Shown piece after piece: positions 496 through 52,269 of a stretch of DNA of 64,000 bases (position 1 is its first letter; every line of letters begins with the position of its first letter). Under the pieces are notes generated by a model, which searched no databases, was not told the origin of the DNA, and saw nothing but the letters and a program-made list of their open reading frames with translations. Position numbers and translations under genes: made by a program. The stretch lies in contig JAPDFW010000007.1 of assembly GCA_028826165.1 (NCBI GenBank), forward strand, positions 34,668 through 98,667. The letters run 5' to 3'. The stretch comes from Anaeramoeba ignava BMAN. Lineage: Eukaryota > Protista > Anaeramoebae.

Positions 496-3400
496 ATGTC
501 TTTCAAAAGTATTTCTGAAATAAATGAAAACAAATTAGTTTTAGAACTTGGACAAAAAGTGTATTTAGTTGATTCTAATTCTATTCAAAAAGCTCAAAAA
601 ATTGCAAAAGAAAATGAAATGATAAAAAAGAAAAATAAAAAAAATCAAAAAAAAGCAAAACAAATTAAACCAATTAAAACATTAAAAACAAAAGAAGAGA
701 TTGAAAAAGAAAACAAAAAAATTGAAGAACAAAACAAAAAAATTGCAAAACGAAACAAAAAAATTGAAAAACAAAACAAAAATAATGAAACAAAAAAAAA
801 TCTAAATTATAAAAAATTTCCTTTAATTCAAAATTGGAATTTAATTCAAAATAATGATGTAAATAAACTTAGAACTGATATTAAAGAACAAGACTATAAA
901 GTTCTTTCATCTCAATCTTGGAAAATTTTGAGAAAAATGTTTGTATAAAATATAAAATTCAAAATTAATTAAAATTAAAAATAAAATTAAAATCAAAATT
1001 AAATTTAAAATCAAAATTAAAATTAAAAATAAAATTAAAATCAAAATTAAAATTAAAATTAAAATTAAAATCAAAATTAAAATCAAAATTAAAATTAAAA
1101 TTAAAATTAAAATTAAAATTAAAATTAAAATTAAAATCAAAATTAAAATCAAAATCAAAATCAATATCAAAATCAAAATTAAAATTAAAATCAAAATTAA
1201 AATTAAAATTAAAATCAAAATTAAAATTAAAATTAAATTCAAAATTAAATTCAAAATCAAATTCAGAATCAGAATCAAAATCAAAATCAAAATCAAAATC
1301 AAAATCAAAATCAAATTCAAAATCAAAATCAAAATCAAAATCAAAATCAAAATTAAAATTAAAATCAAAATTAAAATCAAAATTAAAATTAAAATTAAAA
1401 TTAAAATTAAAATTAAAATTGAAATTAAAATTAAAATCAAATTCAAATTCAGAATCAAATTAAAATTAAAATCAAAATTAAAATTGAAATTAAAATCAAA
1501 ATCAAAATTAAAATCAAAATTAAAATCAAAATCAAAATTAATTAAAATCAAATTCAAATTCAAATTAAAATTAAATCAAAATCAAAACCAAAATCTAAAT
1601 CAAAATTAAAATCAAAATCAAAATCAAAATTAAAATTAAAATCAAAATCTAAATCAAAATCTAAATCAAAATTAAAATCAAAATCAAAATCAAAATTAAA
1701 ATTAAAATCAAAATCAAAATCAAAATCTAAATTAAAATTAAAATCAAAATCAAAATCAAAATTAAAATTAAAATCAAAATTAAAATCAAAATCAAAATTA
1801 AAATTAAAATCAAAATTAAATTCAAAATCAAAATCAAAACCAAAATCAAAATTAAAATCAAAATTAAAATTAAAATCAAAATCAAAATTAAAATCAAAAT
1901 TAAAATTAAAATCAAAATCAAAATTATTTAAAATCAAAATCAAAATTATTTAAAATCAAAATCAAAATCAAAATTAAAATTCAAAATTAAAATTAAAATT
2001 AAAATTAAAATCAAAATCAAAATCAAAATCAAAATGAAAAATCAAAATCAAAATCAAAATCAAAATCAAAATCAAAATCAAAATTAAAAATTAAAATTAA
2101 AATCAAAATTAAAACCAAAATTAAAATTAAAATTAAAATCAAAATCAAAATCAAAATCAAAATCAAAATCAAAATCAAAATCAAAATTAAATTAAAAACA
2201 AAATTAAAATCAAAATCAAAATTTAAAATTGAAATTAAAATCAAAATCAAAATCAAAATCAAAATTAAAATTCATTTTATTATTAAATTATAGATGCGGA
2301 GGAGGACCAGAAATAGCCAGAAACATTGTGAAAAATGATAAAGAAAATCTAGAAATCGAATTAAATCTACAATCTATTGAAATCAATTATAAAAATAAAA
2401 AAGAAAATATACTTTTTAGTAAATGTGATTATTTAGATAATATAAAGAACAAAATTCAACAAAAATTTAGAATCGAAAAAAATGGTAATTTAATAATTAA
2501 TTTCATCTTTTTTTTTCTCATCAAAATTATTTTTTAAAAAAAATCAAAAAAATTTGTTTTTCTTCTTCTTTTTTTTAGTTTCAATTTATTTTGGAAAGAA
2601 AACAAGAAAACAATTTAAAACAGGAAAACAAATTCAAGATTATAAATTACCAATTAAGAAATTATTTATAAAAAAATCTAATTCAAATTCAAAATCAAAA
2701 TCAAAATCAAAATCAAAATCAAAATCAAAATCAAAATCAAAATCAGAATCAAATTCAAAATCAAATTCAAATTCAGAATCAAAATCAAATTCAAAATCAA
2801 AATCAAAATCAGATTCAAAATCAGAATCAAATTCAAATTCAAATTCAAATTCAAAATCAAAATCAAATTCAAATTCAAAATCAAAATTAAAATCAGATTC
2901 AAAATCAAATTCAAAATTAAAATCAAAATCAGATTCAAAATCAGAATCAAAATCAGAATCAGATTCAAAATTAAAATCAAAATCAAAATTAAAATCAAAA
3001 TTAAAATCAAAATCAAAATCAAAATTAAAATCAAAATCAAAATCAAAATCAAAATTAAAACTAAAACCAAATTCAAAATCAAAAGCAGATTCAAAATCAA
3101 AATCAAAATCAAAATCAGAATCAAAAGCAAAAAAAAAATTGAATTCAAAATCAACAAAATTAAAATCAGAATTAAAATCAAAATCAAAATTGAATTCAAA
3201 ATCAACAAAATTAAAATCAGAATTAAAACCAAAATCAAAATTAAATTCAAAATCAAAATCAAAATTAAAATTAAAATCAAAATTAAAACCAAAATCAAAA
3301 CCAAATTCAAATTCAAAATCAAAATCAAAACCAAAATCAAAATCAAAATCAAAATCAGAATTAAAACAAAAACCAAAATCAAATTCAGAATCAAATTCAA

Positions 3401-6400
3401 ATTCAAAATCAACAAAATTAAAATCTAAATCAAAATCAGATTCAAAATCAAAATTAAAATCAAAATCAGATTCAAAATCAAAATCTAAATCAAAATCTAA
3501 ATCAAAATCAAAATCAAAATTAAAATCAAAATCAAAACCAAAATCAGAATCAAAATCAAAATCAGATTCAAAATCAAAATCAGATTCAAAATCAAAATCA
3601 AAATCAAAATCAAAACCAAAATCAAAATCAGATTCAAAATCAAAATTAAAATCAAAACCAAAATCAGATTCAAAATTAAAACCAAAAAAAAAATTAAATT
3701 CAGAATCAAAATTAAATTCAAAATCAAAATTAAATTCAAAATCAAAACCAAATTCAGAATCAAAAGCAAAAAAAAAATTAAATTCAAAATCAAATTCAAA
3801 ATCAAAATCAAATTCAAATTCAAATTCAAAATCAAAATCAAAATTAAAACCAAAATCAACAAAATTAAATTCAGAATCAAATTCAAAATCAAAAACAAAA
3901 TCAAAACCAAATTCAAAATCAAAACCAAATTCAAAATCAAATTCAAAATCAAATCCAAATTCAAATTCAAAATCAAATTCAAATTCAAAATCAAAATCAG
4001 AATCAGAATCAAAATCAAAATCAAAATCAGAATCAAAAACAGATTCAGAATCAAATTCAAATTCAAAATTAAAACCAAAATCAAAATTAAAATCAGAATC
4101 AAAATCAAATTCAAAATCAAAATCAAAATCAAATTCAAATTCAAATTCAAATTCAAATTCAAAATCAAAATCAAAATCAAAATCAAAATTCAAATTCAAA
4201 ATCAAAATCAAAATCAAATTCAATCGAATCAAATCAAAATCAAAATCAAATTCAAAATCAAAATCAGAATCAAATTCAAATTCAAATTCAAATTCAAATT
4301 CAAATTCAAAATCAAATTCAAAATCAAAATCAAAATCAAAATTAAAACCAAAATCAAATTCAAATTCAGAATCAGAATCAAAATCAAAATCAAATTCAGA
4401 ATCAAAATCAGAATCAAAATCAAATTCAGAATCAAAATCAGAATCAAAATCAAATTCAAATTCAAATTCAAAATCAAATTCAAATTCAAATTCAAAATCA
4501 AAATCAAATTCAAAATCAGAATCAAAATCAAAATCAAATTCAGAATCAAAATCAAAATCAAATTCAGAATCAAAATCAGAATCAAAATCAAAATCAAATT
4601 CAGAATTAAATTCAAAATTAAATTCAAAATCAAAATCAAATTCAAAATCAAAATCAAAATCAGAATCAAAATCAGAATCAGAATCAAAATCAGAATCAGA
4701 ATCAGAATCAGAATCAGAATCAAAATCAGAATCAAAATCAGAATCAAAATCAGAATCAGAATCAAAATCAAAATCAAAATCAAAATCAAAATCAAAACCA
4801 GAATCAGAATCAAAAAAAAAAATAATAATAATCCAAACAAAATCAACAACAGTATCAGAATCAGTATCAGAATCAGAATCAGAATCAAATTCAAAATCAA
4901 AACCAAAATCAGAATCAAATTCAGAATCAACTCAAAATCAAAATAGATCCATTTCGGATATTCGTAATTCATCCATCTTCTCAAGTAATACACCATTTGA
5001 TAAAGGCTCAAATCTAGATTCAGATACAGATTCAACAGATTCAGATTCAAAAACACATGAAGAAACACTTTCAGATTCAGATCCTGATTTTCAAAACTCA
5101 ATCTTTCAACTAAAATCAAATTCAGAACAAAAATTAAAGCAAAATTCAGAATCAGAATCAAAAAAAAAAATAATAATAATCCAAACAAAATCAACAACAG
5201 TATCAGAATCAGTATCAGAATCAGAACCAAAATCAAAATCAAAACCAAATTCAGAACCAAAACCAAAACCAAAACCAAAACCAAATTCAGAATCAAATTC
5301 AGAATCAAAATCAATAACAACAAAAAAATTGGATGATAATCTATTTAATATTTATAATGAAGAATTACCAGTAAATTATAAAAAATTATAAAAAATTAAA
5401 TTATAAAAAATTAAATTATAAAAAATTATAAAAAATTAAATAAATTTAAAGATACAAGAAGGACTTATTGGTCTTCTAAATATTTTAAACAGTTGTTATG
5501 CAAATTCTTCTCTTCAATGCTTATTTCATTCAACTGAACTTACTACCTTTTTTTCTGAAAATAATTTCCAAGATGTTTCAGAAAATTCAATTCTTGGTTC
5601 TTTTATAAAAGTTTTCAAAGATGTTTGTATTTAAAAAAAAACAAAGAAAAAGAAAGTAATTTAAAAATTAAAATTCCAAAAAAAAAATTTTTAGTATCAA
5701 GGATGTAAAAAAAAAGTAATTGATCCAAAATGTTTATTAAATGAAATATTTTCTAAATCCCACTTGCAAAAAGAGAAACAAGAAGATTGCCATGAATTCA
5801 CATCATTTTTATTAAATTCACTTCAAGAAGAACTCAAAAAAATCAACAAAGAAAATGATATCATTTCAGAAATTTTTGAAATTCAAACAGAATCTATAAT
5901 TGAAGGCAAGGATTGCAAACATTCGGCTAAAATTGGAGAGAAATCATTTGAATTCCAACTTCCACTGACAGAATCATTAAGAAAACCAGGAACAAAAGAC
6001 ATTGCTGTTTTAACATACTATAAAAAAGATAAACTGATTTCTATTGAAATTAATAAGGATATGTCTTTTGATGATCTTAAAACACAAATTGCAATGAAAT
6101 CACAAACAGACAAAGACTTTCTCTATCTTTTTGTGGTTAAGGAAGAAAGGATTGAAAAATCGATTTCAACTTCAACACAATTTTTTGATAATTTGAACGA
6201 GAATATTTATGCTTATGAAATTCCCGAACAAAAAATACAAGAATTTGATCAATTTAGAAATCTATCAGAAATCAAAGTTGTTTTTAAGGATCAAAATGTT
6301 TTACTTGAAAGTATCAAAGAAAAAAGCCATTATTCTGGATATGGTTTATTTATCCCATTTATTCAATCAAATGAAAGGCAAGACTTTAAAGAGGTCCAGC

Positions 6401-8150: not shown

Positions 8151-11100
8151 TTATCCATAATCATCTTCATCTGTAACATCTCTTCCTAAAGGTATCATAG
8201 ATTTTTTCTCTGCATCTCTTGCCAAGGATTTTCTCATATCTAAACCATCTTCTTCACCTGAATAATAACCCAAAACTCTTCTAAAAACAATATATCCAAA
8301 ATTTTGATACATTCTAATAGCAACATTATTAGAACTTCTAACATATAAATCAACAAAATACGCATTAGCAATATTTTCAGAAACACCTTCTAATAATTGC
8401 ATTAATTGGCGAGCAAGACCTAAGCGTCTGTATTCAGGAGATACTGTGACAGCAGTGACATGACCATGCCACATTTTGCCTTCTCCTTCGCTTTTCCCAA
8501 ATATATATCCCATTATATCTTTATTTATAGATTCTCCTAATGCACACATATCTGGCCATATTGCTAAATATTGTAAATAAAATCCATTGTGATACTTTTT
8601 ATTTTCATACATAAAATAATAAATAAAATTATAAATTAAATTATAAATAAAATTATAAATTAAATTATAAATAAAATTATAAATTAAATTATAAATAAAA
8701 TTATAAATTAAATTATAAATAAAATTATAAATTAAATTATAAATTAAATTATAAATAAAATTATAAATAAAATTATAAATAAAATTATAAATTAAAATTA
8801 TAAATTAAATTATAAATAAAATTATAAATTAAATTACAAATAAAATTATAAATAAAATAATAAATAAAATTATAAATAAAATTATAAATTAAATTATAAA
8901 TAAAATTATAAATAAAATTATAAATAAAATTATAAATAAAATAAATTAAATTATAAATTAAATTATAAATAAAATTATAAATAAAATTATAAATAAAATT
9001 ATAAATAAAATTATAAATAAAATAAAATTATAAATAAAATTATAAATTAAAATTATAAATTAAAATTATAAATAAAATTATAAATAAAATTATAAATTAA
9101 AATTATAAATTAAATTATAAATAAATTATAAAATAAAATTATAAATAAAATTATAAATTAAATTATAAATTAAATTATAAATTAAATTATAAATTAAAAT
9201 AAATAAAATTATAAATAAATTATAAAATTAAATTATAAATAAAAAATATAAATAAAAATAATAAAAATTATAAATAAAATAATAAATAAATTATAAATTA
9301 AATTATAAATTAAATTATAAATTAAATTATAAAATTAAATTATAAATAAAATTATAAATTAAAATTATAAATTAAAATTATAAATTAAAATTATAAATAA
9401 AATTACAAATAAAATTATAAAATAAAATTAAATTATAAATAAAATTATAAATTAAAATTATAAATAAAATTATAAATAAAATTATAAATAAAATTATAAA
9501 TTAAAATTATAAATAAAATTATAAATAAAATTATAAATAAAATTATAAATAAAATTATAAATAAAAATTATAAATAAAATTATAAATTAAAATTATAAAT
9601 AAAATTATAAATAAAATTATAAATAAAATTAAATAAAATTATAAATAAAATTATAAATAAAATTATAAATAAAATTATAAATAAAATTATAAATTAAATT
9701 ATAAATAAAATTATAAATTAAATTATAAATTAAAATTATAAATTAAATTATAAATAAAATTATAAATAAAAATTATAAATTAAAATTATAAATAAAAATT
9801 ATAAATAAAAATTATAAATTAAAATTATAAATAAAATTATAAATAAAAATTATAAATAAAATTATAAATAAAATTATAAATAAAAATTATAAATTAAAAT
9901 TATAAATAAAATTATAAATTAAAATTATAAATAAAATAAATAAAAATTATAAATAAAATTATAAATTAAATTATAAAATAAAATTATAAATTAAAATATA
10001 AATAAAAATATAAATAAAATATAAATAAATAAATAAAAATTATAAAATAAAATTATAAATAAAATTATAAATAAAATTATAAATTAAAATTATAAATTAA
10101 AATTATAAATAAAATTATAAAATAAATTATAAATTAAATTATAAATTAAAATTAAATTAAAATTATAAATTAAATTATAAATTAAAATTATAAATTAAAA
10201 TTATAAATAAAATTATAAAAAATAAAATAAAATTATAAATAAAATTATAAATAAAATTATAAATAAAAATTATAAATTAAAATTATAAATAAACGAAATT
10301 ATAAATAAAATTATAAATAAAAATTATAAATAAAATTATAAATAAAATTATAAATAAAAATATAAAATAAAATATATAAATAAAATTATAAATAAAAATT
10401 TATAAATAAAATTATAAATAAAATTATAAATAAAATTATAAATAAAATTATAAATAAAATTATAAATAAAATTATAAATTAAAAAATTATAAATAAAATT
10501 ATAAATAAAATTATAAATAAAATTATAAATTAAATTATAAATAAAATTATAAATAAAATTATAAATTAAATTATAAATAAAATTATATAATAAAATTATA
10601 AATAAAAATATATAAATAAAATTATAAATAAAAATATAAATAAAAATTATAAATTAAAATTATAAATAAAATTATAAATAAAATTATAAAATAAAATATA
10701 AATAAAATTATAAATTAAATTATAAATTAAATTATAAATATAAAATTATAAATTAAATTATAAATAAAATTATAAATAAAATTAAAATTAAATTATAAAT
10801 AAAATTATAAATAAAATTATAAATAAAAATTATAAATAAAAATTATAAATAAAATTATAAAAATAAAATTATAAAATAAAATTATAAATAAAAATAAAAA
10901 TAAAATAAAAATTATAAATAAAAAATAAATAAATATAAATAAAATTATAAATAAAATTATAAATTAAAATTATAAATAAAATTATAAAATAAAATTAAAT
11001 AACAAAAAATAAAATAAAATTATAAATAAAATTATAAATAAAATTATAAATAAAATTATAAAATAAAAATTATAAATTAAATAAAATATAAATAAAATTA

Positions 11101-12628
11101 TAAATAAAATTATAAATAAAATTATAAATTAAATTATAAATTAAATATAAATAAAATATAAATAAAATTATAAATAAAATTATAAATAAAATTATAAATA
11201 AAAATTATAAATAAAAATTATAAATAAAATTATAAATAAAATTATAAATAAAATTATAAATAAAAATTATAAATTAAAATTATAAATTAAATTATAAATA
11301 AAATTATAAATTAAATTATAAATTAAATTATAAATTAAATTATAAAATTAAATTATAAATTAAATTATAAATAAAATTATAAATTAAAATTATAAATAAA
11401 ATTATAAATAAAAATTATAAATAAAATTATAAATAAAATTAAATTATAAATTAAATTATAAATAAAATAACAAATAAAATTATAAATAAAATAATAAATA
11501 AAAATTATAAATAAAATTATAAATTAAATTATAAAATAAATAAAATAATAAATAAAATTATAAATAAAATTATAAATAAAATTATAAATAAAATTATAAA
11601 TAAAATTATAAATAAAATTATAAATAAAAATTATAAATAAAATTATAAATAAAATTATAAATAAAAATTATAAATAAAATTATAAATAAAATTATAAATA
11701 AAATAATAAATTAAATTATAAATTAAAATTATAAATAAAATTATAAATTAAATTATAAATTAAATTATAAATTAAAATTATAAATAAAATTATAAATAAA
11801 ATTATAAATAAAATTATAAATTAAATTATAAATTAAATTATAAATTAAATTATAAATTAAATTATAAATTAAATTATAAATTAAATTATAAATTAAATTA
11901 TAAATTAAATTATAAATAAAATTATAAATTAAAATTATAAATAAAATTATAAATAAAATTATAAATTAAAATTATAAAATAAAATTATAAATTAAATTAT
12001 AAATTAAATTATAAATTAAATTATAAATAAAAATTATAAATTAAATTATAAATAAAATTATAAAATAAAATTATAAATTAAATTATAAAATAAAATTATA
12101 AATAAAATTATAAATAAAATTATAAATAAAATTATAAATAAAAATTATAAATTCAAATTATAAATTAAATTATAAAATAAAATTATAAATTAAATTATAA
12201 ATTAAATTATAAATAAAATTATAAATTAAATTATAAATAAAATTATAAATTAAATAATAAATTAAATAATAAATTAAATTATAAATAAAATTAAATAAAT
12301 AAAATTATAAATAAAATTATAAATAAAATTATAAATAAAATTATAAATAAAATTATAAATAAAATTATAAATAAAATTATAAATTAAATTATAAATTAAA
12401 TTATAAATTAAATTATAAATAAAAATATAAATAAAACTATAAATAAAATTATAAATTAAATTATAAATTAAATTATAAATTAAATTATAAATAAAATTAT
12501 AAATTAAATTATAAATAAAATTATTATTATTTTTCTATGATTTTTTGTACAGTTTCTGTTAAATGATCTAAATTAACATCTGTAAAATTAAATAAATCAT
12601 TTGCTTCAAATCTTCTTATTGTTGTCAT
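8151..12628 (-). CDS. NAA20: N-alpha-acetyltransferase 20 (NatB catalytic subunit), 173 aa, two exons
   Basis: Exon 1 (12628-12551) MTTIRRFEANDLFNFTDVNLDHLTET joins exon 2 (8594-8151) YHNGFYLQYLAIWPD...GYIFGKSEG...WHGHVTAVTVSPEYRRLGLA...FVDLYVRSSNNVAIRMY. These are NAA20/Nat3 motifs. Confidence 0.95.
8595..12550 (-). repeat. Giant satellite intron of NAA20 (3956 nt), 12-mer (ATAAATAAAATT/ATAAATTAAATT)n on the + strand
   Basis: GTACAA donor at 12550 and AAG acceptor at 8595; the phase-0 join gives the conserved LTET|Y. The interior is almost purely A/T. Confidence 0.92.
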
Positions 12629-16088: not shown

Positions 16089-19000
16089 ATGAGTCTTTCT
16101 TTTAATGTTAAAATGTCTAATTTTTCAGGAAGTGGTTTAATTGCTTGTGATCGGTAATTTAAATATAAAATTTATATTTAGATTTGAAATTTAAGATTTT
16201 TTTTTTTTTTTTGAAATGATTTTTCATCAATTTTTTATCAATTTTTTATAAAAGATCTGGCACAAGTGATCCATTTCTTAAAATTACATTTGATAGTACA
16301 AAACATTTTCAAACTGAAGTTATAAAGAAAAGTAAATTGAATTTATGAAAAAAAAATATAAATGAAAAAATTAAATTTTAATTTTAAATTTTTTCAATTA
16401 AAATCAAGCGCTTGAACCTCAATGGAAATTTGAAAATGAATTCACTTATGATACTTATACCCCTGAAAGATTAAATTCCAAATATTTCAAAATTGAATGT
16501 TGGGATTGGAACAAAGTTGAAAAAGCTGAATTAATGGGATCTTTTTCAATGAATTTATGGAATATTGCAACTGGTCCAAAACATATTGATCATTTATTAA
16601 GATTAAGAGGAAAACCTGCAGGAAGAATTAGTTTAGATATTGAAATGATTCAAAAATCTGATGTTATTATGAATTTTGAGGAAGTGAATGTTTTTGATGT
16701 TTTAGGAAAAAATCAAAATGGTACTTCTGATATTTGTATTGAATATAACTTTTCTACCAAGTATATTTAAAATAAATCAAAATAAATTTAAAATATTTAA
16801 ATATTTAAATAAATATTCAAATAAATATCTAAATAATATTTAAAATAAATATTCAAATTAATATTTAAATAAATATTTAAATAAATATTCAAAATAAATA
16901 TTCAAATAAATATTTAAATAAATATCTAAAATATTTAAATAAATATTCAAATAAATATTTAAATAAATATTTAAAATATTTAAATAAATATTTAAAATAT
17001 TTAAATAAATATTTCAAATAAATATTCAAATAAATATTCAAAATAAATATTCAAATAAATATTCAAATAAATATTCAAATAAATATTCAAATAAATATTT
17101 AAATAAATATTTAAATAAATATCCAAATAAATATTCAAATAAATATTCAAATAATATTTAAATAAATATTCAAAATAAATATTCAAATTAATATTCAAAT
17201 AAATATTCAAATAAATATTCAAATAAATATTCAAATAAATATTCAAATAAATATCCAAATAAATATCCAAATAAATATTCAAATAAATATTTAAATAAAT
17301 ATTTAAATAAATATTCAAATAAATATTCAAATAAATATTCAAAATATTCAAAATAAATATCCAAAATATTTAAATAAATATCCAAATAAATATTCAAATA
17401 AATATTCAAATAAATATTTAAATAAATATTTAAAATAAATATTCAAATTAATATTCAAATAAATATTCAAATAAATATTCAAATAAATATTTAAATAAAT
17501 ATTCAAATTAATATTTAAAATAAATATTTAAAATAAATATCCAAATAAATATTCAAATAAATATCCAAATAAATATTTAAATAAATATTTAAATAAATAT
17601 TCAAATAAATATTCAAATAAATATTCAAATAAATATCTAAATAAATATCCAAAATAAATATTCAAATAAATATCCAAATAAATATTCAAATAAATATTCA
17701 AATAAATATTTAAATAAATATTTAAATAAATATTCAAATAATATTTAAAATATCTAAAATAAATATTTAAATAAATATTCAAAATAAATATTCAAATTAA
17801 TATTTAAATAAATATTTAAATAAATATTCAAAATAAATATTCAAAATAAATATTTAAAATAAATATTAAAATAAATATTCAAATAAATATTTAAATTAAT
17901 ATTTAAATAAATATTTAAATTAATATTTAAATAAATATTCAAATAAATATTTAAAATAAATATCCAAAAATATCCAAATTAATATTCAAAATATTCAAAA
18001 ATATCCAAAATAATATTTAAATAAATATTCAAATAAATATTTAAATAAATATTTAAATAAATATTTAAAATATTCAAATTAATATTTAAATAAAATATCT
18101 AAATTAATATTCAAAATAATATTTAAATAAATATTTAAATAAATATTCAAATAATATTCAAATAAATGTAAATTAATATTCAAATAAATATTTTAAATAA
18201 ATATTTAAAATAAATATCCAAATAAAAATAAATATCCAAATAAATATTTAAATAAATATTCAAATAAATATTTAAATAAATATCAAAATAAATATTTAAA
18301 TAAATATCAAAAATAAATATCCAAATAAATATATAAAAATATTCCAAATTAATATTTAAATAAATATCCAAATAAATATTTAAATAAATATTTAAATAAA
18401 TATTTAAATAAATATTCAAATAAATATTTAAATAAATATTTAAATAAATATTCAAATAAATATTTAAATAAATATTCAAATAAATATTTAAATAAATATT
18501 CAAATAAATATTTAAAATAAATATTTAAATAAATATTTAAATAAATATATTCAAATAAATATTTAAATAAATATTTAAATAAATATTTAAATATTCAAAT
18601 AAATATTTTAAATAAATATTCAAATAAATATTTAAATAAATATTCAAATTTAAATAAATATTCAAATAAATATTTAAATAAATATTCAAATAAATATTTA
18701 AATAAATATTCAAATAAATATTTAAATAAATATTTAAATAAATATCTAAATAAATATTCAAATAAATATTTAAATAAATATTCAAATTAAAAAATATCCA
18801 AAATATTTAAATAAATATTCAAATTAATATTCAAATAAATATTCAAAATATTTAAATAAATATTCAAATAAATATTTAAATAAAATTTTAAAAATATTCA
18901 AAATAAATATTCAAATAAATATTTAAATAAATATTTAAATAAATATTCAAATAAATATTTAAATAAATATTTAAATAAATATTCAAAATATTTAAATAAA

Positions 19001-21276
19001 TATTCAAAATATTTAAATAAATATTCAAATAAATATTTAAATAAATATTCAAATAAATATTTAAATAAATATTCAAATAAATATCCAAATAAATATTTAA
19101 ATAAATATTTAAAATATTTAAATAAATATTCAAATAAATATTTAAATTAATATTCAAATAAATATTTAAATTAATATTCAAATAAATATTTAAATTAATA
19201 TTCAAATAAATATTCAAAATAAATATCTAAAATTAAATATTCAAATAAATATTTAAATAAATATTCAAATAAATATTCAAATAAATATTTAAATAAATAT
19301 TTAAATAAATATTCAAATAAATATTTAAATAAATATCTAAATAAATATTCAAAATAAATATTCAAAATAATATTCAAAATTAATATTCAAATAAATATTC
19401 AAATAAATATCCAAATAAATATCTAAAATAATATTCAAATTAATATTCAAATTAATATTCAAATAAATATTTAAATAAATATCCAAAATAAATATTCAAA
19501 TAAATATTCAAATAAATATCTATTAGTCCTGACCAAAAACAAAAAACTGATACAATTCGAGGTGTTAATCAAGGAACTTGGCAAGATTCTCCTAAATTAT
19601 TTTTTTCTTCTTCTTTAAAAGAATTAATTGATGGAAATCTTTATATTCAACTTCTTCATGATTCTCACCAAAATCCTTCAGTTATAGGAGATTGTGAAGT
19701 AAAAAAAAAACAAAATAATTTTCTTTTTTTTTTAAAAATATTTTTTATTCCACTTTTTCTTTTTAGTATAACTTTAAAATTACTGAATTAAACGAAGAAA
19801 CTGAAGTTGAAATTGAAACAGATTTTTATATGTCAGGAAATATAACAGGAAAACTTAAAGGAAAATTGAAAGTATTAAACATTCCTGAATTTTATCAAAT
19901 GATTGGAGGAAAATCAACTGAATTTGGTGTTTCTGGAGGAGTTCCAATACTTGAATTTTCACATGTTCCTGAAAAGTAAAAAAAACCAAAAAATTTGCTA
20001 GTTCAAAATTATTCTAAAAAAAGGAATTTTGCTTTTTTTTTTTTCAGTTATCCAAAAAAAGGATTAGGAGGTCCACCTAAAGTTGCAAAAACTAGAACCA
20101 GAATGACAAGACCTTCTAATACACAAAATACACAAATAATTGAAAAAGAAATAAATGTTAGTACAATTACAAATGTGAATACAACAAAAATCAATCCAAC
20201 AGCAAATACAGGACAACCTTTCTCAAATTTAAGAACCAAATTTGGATTTTCACAATTTACAACTTCCAATTTTCCAAATCAAAGAATACAACCACAAACA
20301 AATGGACAAATTGGGAATAAAATGGGAAATCCATTATTTAATCCAATGGGATTTGGAGCATTTCCACCAAATCAACCAAATCAATTCAATCAACCAAATC
20401 AATTTAATCAACCAAATCAATTCAATCAACCAAAATCAATTTAATCAACCAAATGAATTTAATCAACAAAATGAATTAAATCAACAAAATGAATCAAATG
20501 ATGATTATGCAAATATTAATGATGATGAATTAGAAAGAGAGTTTCAAATGTATCAACAAGTTGAACAAGAAAATGAGAATGAAACAAATGAAGTAAATCA
20601 AGAAAATGCATTAGACAAAGAATTTGATATGTACCAACCAATTGACCAAGAAAATGTTAATGAATCAAACCAATTTAATTCAAATCCAAATCTAAATCAA
20701 TTTAATTCAAATCCAAATTTAAACCAATTTAATTCAAATCCAAATCTAAATCAATTTAATTCAAATCCAAATCTAAATCAATTTAATTCAAATCAAACTC
20801 AAATTAATTCAAATACAACTGCAAATCAATTTAATTCAAATCCAACTCAAATTAATTCAAATACAACCCAAAATCAATTCAATCCTTTAAACCAATTTAC
20901 TCCTTATAACCAATTTAATCAACAAAAACAAATTAATCCATTTAGTCCATTTAATAATCAAAATCAAACTCAAAATCAAACTCAAACTCAAACTCAAAAT
21001 CAAAATCAAAATCAGAACAAAAATCAAAATCAGAACCAAAATCAATCTGAATGGGGTCAAGTTTTCTTAAATCTAAATCCTAATTTTGGACAACCTAATA
21101 AATTTGATTCACCTCCTAATTTTACACAAACTAATTGGATTCCAGGATTTAATTCACCTTCTTATTCTCAAAACACTTCACAACAATGGATTCAACAACA
21201 AGATCCATTTGGAAGACCATTTTGGAAAAATTCTATAACAGGAGCAATTACTTTTATTAATCCAGGAAAATTTTAA
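16089..21276 (+). CDS. Tandem C2-domain protein with N/Q-rich tail and C-terminal WW-like domain
   Basis: Exons 16089-16153, 16255-16331, 16409-16760, 19527-19698, 19767-19975, 20048-21276 (one extra A near 20433). C2 motifs GLIACDRSGTSDPF...TEVIKKTLEPQW...IECWDWN, then NGTSDICIEY; C-terminus WIQQQDPFGRPFWKNSITGAITFINP. Confidence 0.8.
16761..19526 (+). repeat. Giant satellite intron of the C2 gene (2766 nt), 12-mer (AAATAAATATTY)n
   Basis: GTATAT donor and TAG acceptor; the phase-2 join keeps the frame (FSTN/PDQKQKTD). I saw only one interior G (near 18168). Confidence 0.88.
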
Positions 21277-21915
21277 TAATTTAATTTAAGGATATTTTAA
21301 TAATTTAAAGATATTTTAATAATCTAATTTAAAGATAAATTTAATAATTTTAATAATTTAATTTAAAGATAAATTTAATAATTTAATTTAAAAGATATTT
21401 TAATAATTTAATTTAAGGATATTTTAATAATTTAATAATTTAAGATAATTTTAATAATTTAATAATTTAATAATTTAATAATTTAATAATTTAATTTAAA
21501 GATATTTTTAATAATTTTAATAATTTAATTTAAAGATATTTTAATAATTTAAAAGATAAATTTAATAATTTAATTTAAAGATAAATTTAATAATTTAATT
21601 TAAAGATAAATTTAATAATTTAATTTAAAAGATATTTTAATAATCTAATTTAAGATAATTTTAATAATTTAATAATTTAATAATTTAATTTAAAAGATAA
21701 ATTTAATAATTTTAATAATTTAAAAGATATTTTAATAATTTAAAGATAATTTAATAATTTAAAAGATATTTTAATAATCTAATTTAAGATAATTTTAATA
21801 ATTTAATAATTTAATTTAAAGATAAATTTAATAATTTAATTTAAAAGATATTTTAATAATTTAATTTAAAAGATATTTTAATAATTTAATAATTTAAAGA
21901 TAATTGAATAATTTA
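21277..21915 (+). repeat. Intergenic AT-rich tandem repeat built of TTTAAAGATA(T/A)TTT and AATAATTT units
   Basis: Degenerate units repeat directly after the C2 gene stop codon. Confidence 0.8.
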
Positions 21916-22154
21916 AGGAAAAAAATTTTTTTTTTTTGAATTTTGTTCCACTTTTTTTTTTTAAAAAGAAAAATTAAAAAACATTTTATTTCCTATTTTC
22001 TTTATTTTCTTTTTATTTTTTTTCAAATGACGTCATTTAATTTTTTTAATTTTTTTTTTCATTTTCATTTTTTTCATTTTTTTTCTTTCTGTTCCACTTT
22101 TTGATTATTTTTATTTTTATTTTTATTTTTATTTTTATTTTTTATTTTTTATTA

Positions 22155-28920: not shown

Positions 28921-29006
28921 AAAAGAAATTAAATTTAAAAGCATTTTATTTAAAAGAAATTAAATTTCAATAAAGTTTTTCTTTTTATTTCTTTTTATTT
29001 TATTTT

Positions 29007-38891
<9,885 letters not shown>

Positions 38892-43281: not shown

Positions 43282-46200
43282 ATGTCAGATAAAAAAAGAA
43301 AAAAATCAATTGATGATAATGAAGATGCACTTGGAACACATGAACTTGATTTAAAAGAAAAATATAAAATTCTCCAAAGTAAAACACCTCAAAGAAAAGA
43401 AAAAAAACAGGAGCTTTCAATTCCCGAAATTAAAATTCTTAGAACAACTCCTCAATCAAATAAAAAAATAACTTTAAGTGCAAAAAAGTCACTTGATAAT
43501 ATTCAAAAAATTGAAAATGCAAAAAAAATACTTGCAAGGGAAGGTGTAAACAAATTTTAAAATTCAATATAAAATTCAATATAAAATTCATTTATAAAAT
43601 ATTAAAATTAAAAATAAAATTAAAAATTAAAATTGAAGATTTTAAACCAGAATCAAAAACCAAAAGTTATAAAAAGACCTAGTTTAAGATTTAGGAATTC
43701 AAATAAAAGAGCAAATTTAACAGAAACAAACCAAATTCAACAAAAATCAAAAGAGCAAAATAATTTTGGAGATTCTAACCAAAATAATAATTCAGAACAA
43801 AATAATGATAATAATAACAATAACAATAATAATAACAATAACCAAAGTAAAATATAATTATAAATTATAAATAAAATATAAATTAAAATATAAAATTAAA
43901 TTATAAAATTAAATTAAAAGTACAAAATGAAAACGAAAACGAAAATGAAAACGAAAATGAAAAAGAAAATCAAAATGAAAATCAAAATCAAAATCAAAAT
44001 CAAAATCAAAATCAAAATCAAAATCAAAATGAAGATCAAAATCAAAATCAAAATGAAGATCAAAACGAAAATGAAGATGATGAAGATTCACAATCTTCAT
44101 TAACAATTTGGATTGGAGATTTAAATGATTCAATTAATGAAAGTGTACTTTTGAAATTATTTAGAGGATATGGGGCTATTGAAGAAATTAGGAGATATCC
44201 TGGAAAAACGTACTATGGAAAAATATTTATTTAAATATTTATTTTAATATTTATTTTAATATTTCAATTAAATATTTATTTTAATATTTAAATGAATATT
44301 TATTTTAATATTTATTTTAATATTTATTTCAATATTTATTTTAATATTTATTTTAATATTTATTTCAATATTTATTTTAATATTTTAATATTTATTATAA
44401 TATTTATTTTAATATTTATTTTAATATTTATTTTAATATTTAATTTAATATTTAATCTAATATTTAATTTAATATTTATTATAATATTTAATTTAATATT
44501 TATTTTTAATATTTATTTTTAATATTTATTTTAATATTTATTTTAATATTTATTATAATATTTATTTAAATATTTAATTCAATATTTATTTTAATATTTA
44601 TTTTTAATATTTAATTTTAATATTTATTTTAATATTTATTTTAATATTTAATTAAATATTTATTTTAATATTTATTTTAATATTTAATTAAATATTTATT
44701 TTAATATTTATTTTAATATTTAATTAAATATTTATTTTAATATTTATTTTTAATATTTATTTAAATATTTAATTTTAATATTTATTTTAATATTTATTTC
44801 AATATTTATTTCAATATTTATTTTAAATATTTATTTTAATATTTATTTTAATATTTATTTTAATATTTATTTTAATATTTATTTTAATATTTATTTTAAT
44901 ATTTGTTTAAATATTTATTTTTTTAATATTTATTTTAATATTTATTTTAATATTTATTTAAATATTTATTTTAATATTTATTTTTAATATTTATTTTAAT
45001 ATTTATTTTTAATATTTATTTTAATATTTATTTTAATATTTATTTCAATATTTATTTTAATATTTATTTTAATATTTATTTTAATATTTATTTTAATATT
45101 TATTTTTATTTAAATATTTATTTTAATATTTATTTTAATATTTATTTTAATATTTATTTTAATATTTATTTTAAATTTTAATATTTATTTTAATATTTAT
45201 TTTAATATTTATTTTAATATTTATTTTAATATTTATTTTAAATATTTATTTTAATATTTATTTTTAATATTTATTTTTAATATTTATTTTAATATTTATT
45301 TTAATATTTATTTTAAATATTTATTTTAATATTTATTTTAATATTTATTTTAAATATTTATTTTTAATATTTATTTTAATATTTATTTTTAATATTTTAA
45401 TTTATTTTTAATATTTATTTTAATATTTATTTTTAATATTTATTTTAATATTTATTTTAATATTTATTTTAATATTTATTTTAATATTTATTTTAATATT
45501 TATTTTAATATTTATTTTAATATTTATTTTAATATTTATTTTAATATTTATTTAAATATTTATTTTAATATTTATTTTAATATTTATTTTAATATTTAAT
45601 TTAAAATTTATTTTAATATTTATTTAAATATTTATTTTAATATTTATTTTAATATTTATTTAAATATTTATTTTAATATTTATTTTAATATTTATTTTAA
45701 TATTTATTTTAATATTTATTATAATATTTAATTTAATATTTATTCCAATATTTTAATTTAATATTTATTATAATATTTATTTTAATATTTATTTCAATAT
45801 TTATTTTAATATTTAATTTAATATTTATTTTAATATTTAATTTAAAAAGATTCGCTTTTATTAAATTTTCGGAAGAAGAAGCAGCAAGTAATGCAATTAA
45901 ACATATGGATGGTTATACTTATAACGGATCTCGTATAAGAGTTGGAAAAGCAAAATTAAATAATATTGTTACAAATACACAAGATTATCATAGATTAAAT
46001 GAAAAAATAACAATTTCAACAATTGAACAAAGACATATTTTGGAAAATGAATTAAGTTAAATTATTACTTAATTTTTATTATCCCAAAAAAAAAATCAAT
46101 CATTTCCAATTAATTTAATATTTTTTTAATTAGGTTGGGCTTATCAACCAGCTCCTATTATTTCTTATAAATTGGAAGAAGATGAAAAAAATAATTCTCT

Positions 46201-46336: not shown

Positions 46337-46379
46337 AAAGCAAATAAACAAAAACAAAACAAAAGAATAAAACAAAAAC

Positions 46380-46665
46380 TATTTTAATTTAATTTTGATT
46401 TTAATTTTAATTTTGATTTTAATTTTGATTTTGATTTTGATTTTGATTTTGATTTTGATTTTGATTTAAATTTTGATTTTGATTTTGATTTTAATTTTGA
46501 TTTAAATTTTGATTTTGATTTTAAATTTTGATTTTAATTTTGATTTTGATTTTGATTTTGATTTTGATTTAAATTTTGATTTTAAATTTTAAATTTTGAT
46601 TTTGATTTAAATTTTGATTTAAATTTTGATTTTTAATTTTTAATTTTGATTTTGATTTTGATTTT
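46380..46665 (+). repeat. (GATTTT)n-type intergenic microsatellite
   Basis: Hexamer repeat between the RRM and UBX genes. Confidence 0.85.
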
Positions 46666-46711
46666 CATTTTCATTTTTCAATTTTCATTTTTCATTTTTT
46701 TTTTGCTTAAA

Positions 46712-47964: not shown

Positions 47965-47997
47965 ATTTGAAAAAGACAAAAAAAAAACAATAAAATT

Positions 47998-49784
47998 CAT
48001 TTTGAATTTCAATTTTGATTTTGAATTTGAATTTTGATTTAAATTTAAATTTTGATTTAAATTTTAATTTTGATTTTAATTTTAATTTTGATTTAAATTT
48101 TGATTTTGATTTTGAATTTTGATTTAAATTTTAATTTTCATTTTAAATTTGATTTTAAATTTTGATTTTAATTTAAATTTTGATTTAAATTTTGATTTAA
48201 ATTTTAATTTTAATTTTGATTTAAATTTTAATTTTGATTTAAATTTTAATTTTGATTTAAATTTTGATTTAAATTTTAATTTTGAATTTTGATTTAAATT
48301 TTGATTTTGATTTTGATTTAAATTTTCATTTAAATTTTGATTTAAATTTTGATTTTGATTTAAATTTTGATTTAAATTTTAATTTGAATTTTCATTTAAA
48401 TTTTGATTTAAATTTTGATTTTGATTTAAATTTTGATTTTAATTTTGATTTTGATTTTAATTTTGATTTTGATTTTAAATTTTGATTTAAATTTTGATTT
48501 AAATTTTGATTTTGATTTTGATTTTGATTTTGATTTAAATTTTGATTTAAATTTTGATTTGAATTTTGATTTGAATTTTGATTTAAATTTTGATTTAAAT
48601 TTTGATTTAAATTTTGATTTAAATTTTGATTTAAATTTTGATTTTGATTTTGATTTTGATTTTGAATTTAATTTTGATTTTAATTTTGATTTTGATTTTG
48701 ATTTTGATTTTGATTTTGATTTTGATTTTGATTTTGATTTTCAATTTTGATTTAAATTTTCATTTTAATTTTAATTTAAATTTTGATTTAAATTTTGATT
48801 TAAATTTTGATTTAAATTTTGATTTTAATTTAAATTTTGATTTAAATTTTGATTTAAATTTTCATTTAAATTTTGATTTTGATTTTGATTTTGATTTTGA
48901 TTTAAATTTTGATTTTGATTTAGATTTTGATTTTCATTTTAATTTTAATTTTGATTTTGATTTAGATTTTGATTTTGATTTTAATTTAAATTTTGATTTA
49001 AATTTTGATTTAAATTTTAATTTGATTTTGATTTTAATTTTAATTTAAATTTTCATTTGAATTTTGATTTAAATTTTGATTTTGATTTTGATTTTGATTT
49101 GAATTTTAATTTTGATTTTGATTTTGATTTTGATTTTGATTTAAATTTTAATTTTGATTTTAATTTTGATTTAAATATTGATTTTGATTTTAATTTTGAT
49201 TTAAATATTGATTTTGATTTTGATTTTGATTTTAAATTTTGATTTAAATTTTGATTTTGATTTAAATTTTAATTTTGATTTTGATTTTAATTTTAATTTT
49301 AATTTTAATTTAATTTTGATTTGAATTTTGATTTTGATTTTGATTTTGATTTTGATTTAAATTTTGATTTAAATTTTAATATTGATTTTGATTTAAATTT
49401 TGATTTAAATTTTAATATTGATTTTGATTTTAATTTTAATTTTGATTTAAATTTTGATTTAAATTTTGATTTTGATTTTGATTTTGATTTTGATTTTGAT
49501 TTAAATTTTAATTTAAATTTTGATTTGAATTTTGATTTTGATTTTGATTTTGATTTTAATTTTCATTTAAATTTTGATTTAAATTTTGATTTAAATTTTG
49601 ATTTAAATTTTGATTTAAATTTTGATTTAAATTTTGATTTTGATTTTAATTTAAATTTTGATTTTAATTTTGATTTAAATTTTGATTTTAATTTTAATTT
49701 TGATTTTCATTTTAATTTTAATTTTGATTTTGATTTTCATTTTAATTTTAAATTTTGATTTTCATTTTGATTTTAATTTTGATT
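47998..49784 (+). repeat. About 1.8 kb mixed (GATTTT)/(GATTTAAATTTT) satellite between convergent genes
   Basis: 6- and 12-mer units, continuous with the NQ tail of the FYVE gene on the minus strand. Confidence 0.9.
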
Positions 49785-52269
49785 TTAATTTTGATTTAAA
49801 TTTTGATTTGAATTTTGATTTGAATTTTCATTTGAATTTTCATTTGAATTTTGATTTTCATTTTGATTTTGATTTTCATTTTCATTTTCATTTTGATTTT
49901 CATTTAAATCTTTTAAATTCTCTTTTGTTAAACGAGCCATTTGCCGAAGATCAGAATCATTTGAATAAATAAGTAATTCACACAAAGTCAAACATTGACC
50001 ATCAATTAAAGCTTGTTTCATATGTTCCATTTGAGAAAGATCCTTCAATTTTGTTAAAGTAAACAATTTAGCGGATCTGTCAATAGTAGTTCTAAAAATA
50101 GAAACAAGATCAGGAATAACTGTTTGGTCCTGTTTAAGACGATGCTCATTTTCAAAAGAGCTGATATTGAAAATGAACTCAACAACATTAACAATAACTG
50201 AAGAAACTGTGCATATTTTAAGAAGTTTAAGAGCAGATTTGATTCCACAGGCAAAAATAGAATCCAAATTGCTGTCATTTTTGGCAAGTTTGGCAAGCAG
50301 TTGAGTCACAAAATAACTCATTGCAATTGATCCTTTTTTGTTTGTTGGTGAGAGAAGTTTCATAAGAGTTGAAACTCCTCCTGTTTGTGAAATTGCTTTT
50401 TGAACTGCTTCAGTTTCCCCTAATCGTGCAAGCACTCCTGCTACAAGAACTAGCACAGATCGTGTAAGCGATGTTGATGATAATATTTGAAGAAGTTGTA
50501 ATGCATGAGAGATTTGGAATATTTCATTCTCAAAATTTTCCATTTCGTGAACTCCCATTATGTAGTTAAATAAAAATCGTGATGCACTGTTTTGAATTGA
50601 TGTTTCAGTGCTTCTTTTTAAAATGAATTTTGGAAGTGTTCTAATTAAAGGTATAAATTCTTCTTGATCCAGAACTTTAATATTTTGTGCTTTTTAATTT
50701 TAATTTTAATATTAATTTTAATTTTAATTTTAATTTTAATATTAATTTTGATTTTATAAATGAATTTTAATTTTAATATTAATTTTAATTTTAATTTTAA
50801 TTTTAATTTTAATTTTAATTTTATAAATGAATTTTAATTTTAATTTTGATTTTAATTTTAATTTTAATTTTAATTTTGATTTTAATTTTAATTTTAATTT
50901 TAATTTTGATTTTAATTTTATAATTTTAATTTTAATATTAATTTTAATTTTAATTTTAATTTTAATATTAATATTGATTTTAATTTAAATTTTAATTTTA
51001 TAATTTTAATTTTAATTTTAATTTTAATTTTAATTTTAATTTTAATTTTATAATTTTAATTTTTAATTTAAATTTTATAAATGAATTTTAATTTTAATTT
51101 TAATTTTAATTTTAATTTTAATTTTATAAATGAATTTTAATTTTAATTTTAATTTTAATTTTGATTTTAATTTTAATTTTAATTTTTAATTTTAATTTTA
51201 ATTTTGATTTGAATTTTGATTTAAATTTTTGATTTTAATTTTGATTTTAATTTTGATTTTAATTTTAATTTTGATTTTAATTTTAATTTTAATTTTGATT
51301 TTAATTTTAATTTTTAATTTTAATTTTGATATTAATTTTTAATTTTAATTTTTAATTTTTAATTTTAATTTTAATTTTAATTTTAATTTTAATTTTAATT
51401 TTAATTTTGATTTTAATTTTAATTTTAATTTTAATTTTGATTTTAATTTTAATTTTAATTTTAATTTTAATTTTATAAATGAATATTAATATTGATATTA
51501 ATTTTAATTTTAATTATTTTAATTTTAATTTTTAATTTTAATTTTGATTTTGATTTTAATTTTAATTTTAATTTTAATTTTAATTTTAATATTAATTTTA
51601 ATTTTAATTTTAATTTTAATTTTAATTTTAATTTTAATTTTAATTTGGATTTCTACGATTTTTATCAGATGTTAAATTCCCCATAAGTTCAAAAGAAAGA
51701 TGTCTCAAAGAATGTCTTTGAGAAATAGCAATAGAAAAAAGCAAACGAAAAATATCAGAATTAGCATGAACAGGGAAATTTTTTTTTGTAGTTTTAATAA
51801 GTAATTCAAAAGATAATTTTTGAACTTGAAGATAAGAAGATTTAAGAAGGTCGAAAAAATACAAAAGAGAATTCCACTGTTGACTAATCAAAGAGGGTTG
51901 AATATCACGACCTTCACGGGAAGCAACGGCCATAACACCATGTAAAGGTTGGTGGTTTTCTTGTGTGGAAATGAGAGTGTGACAAGGATCACACACACGA
52001 TAGTTTTGTGTTTGTCTTCCAACAAGAAATGAGTATGATTTAGTTGCACATGATGAGCACACTAATAATCCACAATATCGGCAATGATGTCTTCGCTTGG
52101 TTTTAGTGAATTTGCTCCAGCAGATCATGCAATTCGTGTATAAATCATCCCGAAGCCAATTTTCTTTAGGTACAATTGTCTCAATAAATGGTGTTAGAAT
52201 TGAATATGATCCTAATGTTTGATAATCATTCGGAATTTTATCATCTAAATATTTTTCTAATTCTGACAT
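49785..52269 (-). CDS. FYVE zinc finger + armadillo-like repeat protein, 505 aa
   Basis: Exons 52269-51657 and 50689-49785 with a phase-1 join. FYVE WLRDD...CMICWSKF...RRHHCRYCGLLVCSSC...RVCDPC; ARM-like AISQTGGVSTLMKLL. Confidence 0.85.
50690..51656 (-). repeat. Satellite-filled intron of the FYVE gene (967 nt), (AAAATT/AAAATC)n on the sense strand
   Basis: GTAGAA donor at 51656 and AAG acceptor at 50690. Confidence 0.82.

What the first reader, a model, noticed from the sequence alone, without database searches (positions are those of the whole stretch)
939..51656. Satellite-inflated giant introns, most with their own tandem repeat and nearly G-free on the sense strand
Seen: most introns are 59-109 nt, but seven are 211-3956 nt and consist almost wholly of a tandem repeat. 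They are USP i1 (AAAATY, 1355 nt), NAA20 (12-mer, 3956 nt in a 522-nt CDS), C2 (AAATAAATATTY, 2766 nt), CHD (AAAATC, 672 nt; about 19-mer, 211 nt), RRM (ATATTTATTTTA, 1640 nt) and FYVE (AAAATT, 967 nt). Removing them rebuilds conserved motifs exactly (LTET|Y, GKT|FAF). In six of the seven, the minor GC base on the sense strand is predominantly C whichever way the gene faces; the NAA20 intron is nearly pure A/T. Inference: introns here grow by local slippage amplification rather than transposon insertion, and are tolerated only while they create no new splice signal.
Basis: partly seen in the sequence, partly recalled or inferred. Interest (0 to 1): 0.8.

Follow-up and report, generated by a model that had tools for sequence, protein, structure and literature searches.

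The report
Introns swollen by AT-rich tandem repeats
In the anaerobic amoeba Anaeramoeba ignava, normal short introns have been inflated up to 50-fold by tandem repeats that fill about a third of the sampled DNA; the repeats almost never contain splice-site letters on the gene's strand, but their lack of G there is a tendency, not a rule, and is not special to introns.

Summary
All seven introns lie at the stated coordinates (211-3956 nt). Each is 87-99% one tandem array and has only 2-12 G on the sense strand. Two junctions (NAA20, FYVE) match the public GenBank proteins of Anaeramoeba ignava exactly. The RRM and CHD-211 junctions rebuild Pfam domains. The NAA20 intron position is shared with Balamuthia and a chytrid, so it is an old intron that swelled.

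In a 264-kb sample, 36% of the DNA is tandem arrays of 150 nt or more, in introns, spacers and coding low-complexity regions alike. Intron arrays with clear polarity carry C rather than G on the sense strand 17:4. Three G-type exceptions are proven by motif continuity (MORN, FTHFS, MeaB). Arrays between same-direction genes show a similar trend (5:2), and short introns show none.

Intron arrays hold 26 sense-strand GT/AG against 246 on the antisense strand. This fits the idea of avoiding new splice signals. However, the TCA/TGA context behind it also dominates short-unit intergenic arrays. Repeat units are not private: the NAA20 24-mer occurs about 9000 times genome-wide.

Earlier scan notes on this window gave the same NAA20 reading.

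The parts
939..2293 (+). USP gene intron 1, 1355 nt. AAAATY hexamer array at 967-2270.
   Evidence: Only the 939 donor (GTTTGT) and the 2293 acceptor keep the frame SQSWKILRK-I-CGGGPEI. Exon 2 has no start codon of its own. No domain hit for either half. This is the least certain junction.
8595..12550 (-). NAA20 intron, 3956 nt. 12-mer (24-mer higher order) A/T array at 8607-12524.
   Evidence: The junction LTET|Y equals GenBank KAJ5080582.1. The intron position is shared with Balamuthia and a chytrid.
12551..12628 (-). NAA20 exon 1 (26 codons, MTTIRRFEANDLFNFTDVNLDHLTET).
8151..8594 (-). NAA20 exon 2 (147 codons plus stop), GNAT domain.
16761..19526 (+). Intron in the RasGAP-PH-C2 gene, 2766 nt. 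AAATAAATATTY array at 16798-19519.
   Evidence: Phase-2 junction NFST-N-PDQKQK. The downstream exon has no Met in its first 60 residues.
36421..37092 (-). CHD gene intron, 672 nt. AAAATC array.
   Evidence: GTAAAA...TTTTTAG boundaries. Zero AG inside. Flanked downstream by coding AAATCA/GAATCA (KS/ES) repeats.
34962..35172 (-). CHD gene intron, 211 nt. 19-mer array at 34966-35149.
   Evidence: Phase 0, PEYVE|VDRIID, between chromodomain 1 (profile to position 51 of 53) and chromodomain 2 (from position 4).
44210..45849 (+). RRM gene intron, 1640 nt. AATATTTATTTT array at 44222-45845.
   Evidence: RRM_1 profile 1-30 upstream and 41-70 downstream. GKT|FAFIKF.
50690..51656 (-). FYVE gene intron, 967 nt. 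AAAATT array at 50692-51646.
   Evidence: The GenBank protein KAJ5080595.1 (505 aa) reads LTSDKN-P-QNIKVLDQ across it.
2680..4940 (+). Coding AAATCA-type (KS/NS/ES) low-complexity exon of the USP gene. It is the same hexamer family as intron 1.
   Evidence: Open frame 2554-5391.
21344..21916 (+). Intergenic 25-mer array between two + strand genes, with G on the sense strand and 20 AG.
   Evidence: The upstream gene stops at 21274-21276. The RCC1 gene starts at about 22155.
46388..46677 (+). Intergenic TTTGAT array between two + strand genes (sense G, TGA context).
27681..28923 (.). Intergenic 11-mer array between convergent genes (symplekin +, CHD -).
47999..49909 (.). Array ATTTTGATTTTA between convergent UBX (+) and FYVE (-) genes. 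Its right end overlaps the NQ-rich tail of the FYVE gene.

Best explanation
These are ordinary U2-type GT-AG introns of Anaeramoeba ignava BMAN. At least one sits at an ancient intron position. Their interiors have been inflated in place by tandem amplification of AT-rich 5-36-nt units, through replication slippage and unequal exchange.

This is one face of a genome-wide proliferation of satellites. The same kind of array fills spacers between genes and, as AAAATC-type codon repeats, low-complexity exons.

The arrays can be spliced out because they hold almost no GT or AG on the transcribed sense strand. The true 3' AG is therefore the first AG after hundreds to thousands of bases. The array often runs to within 2-14 nt of that AG, so the branch site must lie in the last repeat units (inferred).

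Having C rather than G on the sense strand is a real but partial polarity of about 80%. Arrays between same-direction genes share it. It is therefore not an intron-specific rule.

Shown: the anatomy, junction homology, two public gene models, the ancient intron position, a length difference between two gene copies, and the counts. Inferred: the slippage mechanism, the position of the branch site, and any selection.
For: Organism and public models.

Arrays make up 87-99% of each intron.

History of the NAA20 intron:
- The T26|Y27 position holds an 86-nt intron in Balamuthia and an intron in a chytrid.
- The A. flamelloides gene has no intron there.
- A second A. ignava copy on contig C100 spans 2293 nt against 4475 nt, so its intron is about 1774 nt against 3956 nt.

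Genome-wide context:
- 35.7% of 264 kb lies in arrays of 150 nt or more.
- 32 satellite introns were found in that sample, which scales to about 5000 genome-wide.
- This fits the published mean intron length of 300 nt against a mode of 76 nt, and intron GC of 8.14%.

Splice letters:
- Sense GT+AG is 26 against 246 antisense in 30.7 kb of intron arrays.
- G-type intron arrays carry 313 G with 1 GT and 0 AG.
- AG-free zones before the 3' splice site span 843-3844 nt or the whole intron.

Polarity is 17:4 in introns and 5:2 in tandem spacers.
Against:
- Array lengths come from a Nanopore assembly and were not checked in raw reads.
- Three junctions (USP i1, C2, CHD672) rest on frames and splice signals only.
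- Intron calls in the 200 kb outside the window are my own. About 13 are backed by motif continuity. The rest rest on open frames.
- The same units recur at many loci, so dispersal of seeds cannot be excluded and 'purely local' origin is not proven.
- The sample is 0.6% of the genome, taken 20-30 kb from contig starts.
Confidence: 0.75

Rival explanations
1. One reading: the sense-strand lack of G is caused by selection specific to introns. Any array that creates GT or AG is removed, and this alone explains the polarity.
For: - Sense GT+AG is 26 against 246 antisense in intron arrays.
- All three intron arrays whose C sits mainly in ACA/TCT context carry the C on the sense strand.
- G-type intron arrays use only TGA, TGG or GGA.
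- Two intergenic arrays carry 20 and 64 sense AG, while no intron array has more than 3.
- Short introns also show GT+AG 11 against AC+CT 25 (p = 0.03).
Against: - TCA/TGA units are free of GT/AG in both orientations and make up 77% of C contexts in all non-coding arrays.
- Only 4 of 18 short-unit intergenic arrays are 'unsafe'. A pure filter therefore predicts about 56% C-type, against 81% observed (p = 0.016).
- G-sense intron arrays score 0/7 against 4/18 for intergenic short-unit arrays, which is not significant (p = 0.29).
- Tandem intergenic arrays show a similar polarity (5:2).
- Proven G-type introns exist.
Confidence: 0.3
2. The polarity is linked to transcription rather than splicing. 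Possible causes are a strand-asymmetric mutation or repair process, avoidance of G-rich or U-rich nascent RNA (R-loops, weak rU:dA hybrids, premature termination), or spread from coding AAAATC repeats, which must carry C on the sense strand.
For: - Polarity follows gene direction at a scale of 10 kb or less.
- It also holds for arrays in spacers between same-direction genes: 5 clear C-type against 2 G-type.
- In the USP and CHD genes the intron hexamer is the same as the neighbouring coding KS/NQ repeat, in the same orientation.
Against: - Short introns show no G/C asymmetry: G 4.2% against C 4.4% (n = 43), and 43 against 45 in the best 28. A general mutational skew is therefore not visible.
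- Three spacer arrays in the window carry G on the sense strand.
- Whether the spacer arrays are transcribed is unknown.
Confidence: 0.3
3. Artefact: the arrays are over-extended by the long-read assembler, or the flanking pieces are separate genes or pseudogenes rather than one spliced gene.
For: The assembly is from ABruijn with polishing of 2017-era Nanopore reads. No raw read or RNA read could be laid.
Against: - Arrays carry structured unit variants at 75-96% match.
- Arrays lie on all 21 sampled contigs.
- Two public gene models use the junctions.
- The published longest intron is 4168 nt, with RNA-seq mapped using a 10-kb intron limit.
- NAA20 exon 1 alone is 26 codons and makes no protein by itself.
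Confidence: 0.04
4. The arrays have a function, for instance delaying or gating expression, positioning nucleosomes through phased A-tracts, or binding a protein at the TCAA/TTGA core.
For: - Periods are multiples of 6 in 23 of 31 intron arrays.
- The TCA context is strongly enriched.
- 144-148-nt periods recur in spacers.
Against: - The arrays are absent from the A. flamelloides NAA20 locus.
- Length differs more than twofold between two A. ignava NAA20 copies.
- The host genes are unrelated housekeeping genes.
Confidence: 0.05

Closest known systems
Satellite-DNA-containing gigantic introns of Drosophila Y-linked fertility genes (kl-3, kl-5; PMC6508621, found)
   Same: Spliceosomal introns whose interior is almost wholly simple tandem repeats. 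They are far longer than the genome's normal introns, are transcribed through and removed.
   Different: - Here the introns are kilobases, not megabases.
- They sit in euchromatic housekeeping genes across the genome (an estimated several thousand introns), not in a handful of Y-linked testis genes.
- No dedicated expression programme is known.
- The organism is a free-living anaerobic protist.
Simple-sequence-repeat-rich AT genomes such as Dictyostelium discoideum and Plasmodium falciparum (own knowledge; P. falciparum AT values quoted in PMC11550330)
   Same: Extreme A+T content, abundant AT-rich micro- and minisatellites in non-coding DNA, and N/Q/K/S codon repeats in exons.
   Different: In this sample arrays of 150 nt or more make up about 36% of the DNA. 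They inflate single introns 10-50 fold. I know of no report of kilobase arrays as a major intron class in those genomes.
AG-dinucleotide exclusion zones and distant branch points in human introns (own knowledge: Gooding et al. 2006)
   Same: The first AG downstream of the branch point is used, and a long AG-free stretch precedes the 3' splice site.
   Different: Here the AG-free zones are 0.8-3.8 kb or the whole intron. They are a by-product of G-poor repeats. Branch sites were not mapped.
Pathogenic intronic repeat expansions in humans (FXN GAA, CNBP CCTG, RFC1; own knowledge)
   Same: In-place expansion of a short unit inside an existing intron by slippage.
   Different: Here the expansions are fixed, common and apparently harmless, and they are AT-rich.
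Introner-type mobile introns (own knowledge)
   Same: A lineage-specific rise in intron DNA.
   Different: No near-identical whole-intron copies, terminal repeats or target duplications were seen. The NAA20 position is ancient rather than new.

Membership tests
U2-type GT-AG spliceosomal intron | GT at the 5' end and AG at the 3' end, with removal restoring one open reading frame | tested here: met
   All seven introns.
U2-type GT-AG spliceosomal intron | The joined exons reproduce a conserved protein or domain | tested here: met
   NAA20 and FYVE equal the public proteins. RRM_1 halves and the chromodomain boundary match. Not shown for USP i1, C2 or CHD672.
U2-type GT-AG spliceosomal intron | Spliced RNA molecules across the junction | not testable with these tools
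No transcript-derived protein of these genes is in the protein collection.
U2-type GT-AG spliceosomal intron | Branch site at a usable distance from the 3' AG | not tested
   Arrays end 2-24 nt before the AG, so the branch site is inferred to lie inside the repeats.
Micro- or minisatellite array grown by slippage or unequal exchange | Head-to-tail copies of a short unit with variants | tested here: met
   TRF gives periods of 5-36 nt and 75-96% match.
Micro- or minisatellite array grown by slippage or unequal exchange | Length differs between homologous loci | tested here: met
   The two A. ignava NAA20 copies have 3956 nt and about 1774 nt at the same intron position. The Balamuthia intron is 86 nt. 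The DNA of the second copy could not be read.
Satellite-containing gigantic introns (Drosophila Y type) | Intron interior made of satellite DNA and far longer than normal introns | tested here: met
   87-99% array content. Up to 52 times the 76-nt mode.
Satellite-containing gigantic introns (Drosophila Y type) | Megabase size, heterochromatic or sex-linked genes, special expression programme | tested here: not met
   Sizes are 0.2-4 kb, in ordinary housekeeping genes packed among other genes.
Transposon-derived or introner intron | Whole-intron copies with terminal repeats or target duplications, or a transposon ORF | tested here: not met
   Only 6-60 nt of each intron is not array. No ORF is present. 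Only the repeat units recur elsewhere, not the introns. No formal search for terminal inverted repeats was run.

The most novel reading that the evidence does not exclude
A. ignava satellites follow a genome-wide, transcription-oriented grammar:
- Short units carry their single G/C almost only as TCA/TGA, so they create no splice dinucleotides.
- Their A/C-rich strand is laid on the sense strand of transcription units, in introns and spacers alike.
- The spliceosome routinely uses branch sites inside the repeats and finds the 3' AG across kilobase-long AG-free zones.

This would make the organism a natural test bed for how splice sites are found when an intron carries no other information.
Probability: 0.25. 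Interest if true: 0.7.

Novelty: new variant of a known kind. Interest (0 to 1): 0.5.

Why it matters
The genome paper reports A. ignava introns as very short (mode 76 nt) yet 300 nt on average, and as the most AT-rich known. It does not say why.

This work explains those numbers. A large minority of introns, about one in six by extrapolation, are filled with kilobase satellites. These probably make up half or more of all intron DNA.

The finding shows intron size evolving by repeat expansion instead of by transposons, in old introns of housekeeping genes, with more than twofold length change between two copies of one gene.

It also gives a clean natural data set for asking which sequences an intron may contain without disturbing splicing, and whether repeat polarity follows transcription.

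Tried and rejected
- **RNA and raw-read check.** The look-up of sequencing runs listed a probable RNA run, X4. They were only counted locally as part of the C2 array.
- **More genome sample.** The polarity test therefore rests on 264 kb.
- **Official gene table around the window.** The look-up of encoding contigs leaves out this genome.
- **DUSP domain across USP i1.** No Pfam or PDB hit for either exon half.
- **Second C2 domain across the C2 intron.** The halves were not detected.
- **First automatic short-intron finder.** It was too noisy and was replaced by a stricter one.
- **Idea that G-type arrays mark gene 3' ends.** This was suggested by three cases in the window. It was rejected after seven spacer arrays in other loci proved C-type.
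- **Idea that array W 21344-21916 is an intron with many AG.** Rejected: it lies between a stop codon and the next gene's start.
Full report
**Organism and context.** The window is G000:C9:34668-98667 of a 42.8-Mb, 147-contig genome. NAA20 exon 2 retrieves a 173-aa protein named N-alpha-acetyltransferase 20 [Anaeramoeba ignava] on a 98,667-nt contig. Earlier scan notes named the same organism.

The genome paper (PMC11550330) reports these figures for strain BMAN:
- 80.65% A+T in the genome.
- 32,108 introns, mode 76 nt, mean 300 nt, longest 4168 nt.
- Intron GC of 8.14%.

RNA-seq was mapped there with a 10-kb intron limit. The assembly is Nanopore-based and polished. Neither the paper nor the held literature mentions satellites or tandem repeats in this genome.

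**The observation.** Arrays take up 87-99% of each intron. Only 3-37 nt lie between the GT and the array, and 2-24 nt between the array and the AG.

Whole-intron sense counts of G/C are 10/123, 12/3, 3/155, 4/88, 2/12, 6/12 and 3/27, in the order USP, NAA20, C2, CHD672, CHD211, RRM, FYVE. Each count includes the two G of the splice sites.

**How well each junction is supported.**
- NAA20: MTT...LTET|YHNGFYLQYL equals GenBank KAJ5080582.1 and aligns with orthologues.
- FYVE: GenBank KAJ5080595.1 (505 aa) maps to 52269-51649 and 50690-49788 and reads LTSDKN-P-QNIKVLDQ.
- RRM: the upstream exon matches RRM_1 profile 1-30 and the downstream exon 41-70.
- CHD-211: phase 0, between chromodomain 1 and chromodomain 2.
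- C2, CHD-672 and USP i1: supported by frame, splice signals and the lack of a start codon downstream only. USP i1 needs a weak GTTTGT donor and neither half gave a domain hit.

All searches were exon by exon, by reference.

**RNA.** A probable RNA run exists (X4). They entered only local base counts of the C2 array. Splicing itself is therefore not shown here. The two public gene models are indirect support.

**Age and dynamics of the NAA20 intron.**
- A. flamelloides NAA20 (174 aa) occupies 525 nt and so has no intron.
- Balamuthia mandrillaris has an 86-nt intron exactly between residues 26 and 27. A chytrid also has an intron there. A pedinophyte alga does not.
- The position is therefore old, and the A. 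ignava intron is an old intron that swelled.
- A. ignava has a second NAA20 copy, KAJ5070078.1. It aligns to the window copy at about 90% identity.
- On contig C100 its two exons span 2293 nt, against 4475 nt here. Its intron at the same place is therefore about 1774 nt against 3956 nt. That DNA could not be read.

- In the 264 kb, 35.7% lies in arrays of 150 nt or more.
- Two 12.5-kb A. flamelloides loci have no array above about 110 nt.
- I found 32 satellite-filled introns in the sample.

Many of these are backed by motif continuity:
- ARF: NVW|DVGGQDKIRPLW.
- EXO1-like N-terminal domain.
- V-ATPase subunit d.
- RRP41: LQADGG|VESACINA.
- SH3: GILP|FSYIKILEP.
- ADP-ribosylglycohydrolase.
- MeaB.
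- MORN.
- FTHFS.

Scaled up, this is about 5000 introns. That fits the published gap between the mode and the mean.

**Polarity.** Among intron arrays with a clear minor base (10 or more, and at least 3-fold), 17 carry C and 4 carry G on the sense strand (p = 0.007). Counting only motif-backed introns the ratio is 13:3 (p = 0.02).

The G-type exceptions are solid:
- MORN intron: YEGEWLNNL|RHGNGKF, G 33 against C 1.
- FTHFS intron: VTEAGFGA-D-CGAEKFF, G 151 against C 3.
- MeaB intron: LCES|GAGYEIILVETVGVGQSE, G 27 against C 0.

Arrays between same-direction genes are 5 C-type to 2 G-type. This does not differ from introns (Fisher p = 0.62). Short introns show no G/C skew: 133 against 140, and 43 against 45 in the best 28.

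**Splice letters.** In 30.7 kb of intron arrays the sense strand has 16 GT and 10 AG. The antisense strand has 246. The G-type intron arrays carry 313 G with one GT and no AG.

However, 77% of C in all non-coding arrays sits in TCA. Its complement TGA makes neither GT nor AG. Short-unit intergenic arrays are mostly of this type too, with only 4 of 18 'unsafe'. The absence of splice letters therefore cannot be ascribed to selection in introns with this sample (0/7 against 4/18, p = 0.29). A pure filter would give about 56% C-type arrays, not 81% (p = 0.016). Something else, common to introns and co-oriented spacers, adds to the polarity.

**Units.** 24 distinct units occur among 31 intron arrays. 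Some recur: AAAATT four times, AAAATC, and AATATTTATTTT in two unrelated genes. The NAA20 24-mer occurs 9073 times genome-wide at one mismatch or fewer, at many loci on both strands. Its letter-reversed control occurs 3020 times. The repeats are genome-wide families drawn from a narrow AT-rich sequence space. They are not private to each intron.

**Verdict.** These are real satellite-inflated introns. They are already present in the public annotation but are not described as such. They are part of a genome-wide satellite load. The sense-strand G-poverty is a partial polarity and not an intron rule.

Noticed in passing
window 2680-4940 (+) and 35173-36420 (-): The intron hexamer AAAATC is also used as coding repeat in the same genes and orientation. 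It is read as AAA-TCA (KS) or AAT-CAA (NQ). One array called by TRF (967-4944) spans an intron, short exons and a 2.3-kb coding repeat.
   Followed up: partly
window 37600-38220 (-): Between the NQ-rich first exon of the CHD gene and the next clear exon lies about 600 nt of degenerate AAAAAT/AAAATC repeat with stops in all frames. It is possibly an eighth satellite intron. Donor and acceptor could not be fixed without RNA.
   Followed up: partly
window 12640-12700 (-), 38895-38950 (-), 22050-22090 (+); L004, L013, L014, L023: A CATTTTTT(T)CATTTTTT-like motif lies 10-60 nt upstream of many start codons. It is a candidate core promoter or initiator element.
   Followed up: no
G000:C100:111601-113893 (-): A second annotated NAA20 copy (KAJ5070078.1) has an intron of about 1774 nt at the same position. 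Whether it is a paralogue or a diverged haplotype is not known.
   Followed up: partly
L002 and L003 (A. flamelloides NAA20 loci): NAA20 is intronless there. The 12.5-kb loci hold no tandem array above about 110 nt, against 36% arrays in the A. ignava sample.
   Followed up: partly
window 56172-58784; L009 7990-8572; L014 1559-2049 and 5024-5434; L016 7705-7996: Intergenic arrays with periods of 144-154 nt (nucleosome-sized) recur on several contigs. An earlier scan note made the same point.
   Followed up: no
31 intron arrays in window and L004-L023: Periods are multiples of six in 23 of 31 intron arrays (6 and 12 nt most often).
   Followed up: no
L004 2371-3300, L013 7961-8718, L014 7243-7509: Three paralogous gene pairs on different contigs have an AAAATT/AAAATC array in the same spacer position. 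The first gene ends ...NQTNPNLF(N/D)LLINKF and the second starts MNE/MND...FKFENENE. The arrays have different lengths.
   Followed up: no
window 44222-45845 versus 8607-12524: The sense unit of the RRM intron is the letter-reversed (not complemented) form of the sense unit of the NAA20 intron. Both forms are abundant genome-wide.
   Followed up: no
   Followed up: no
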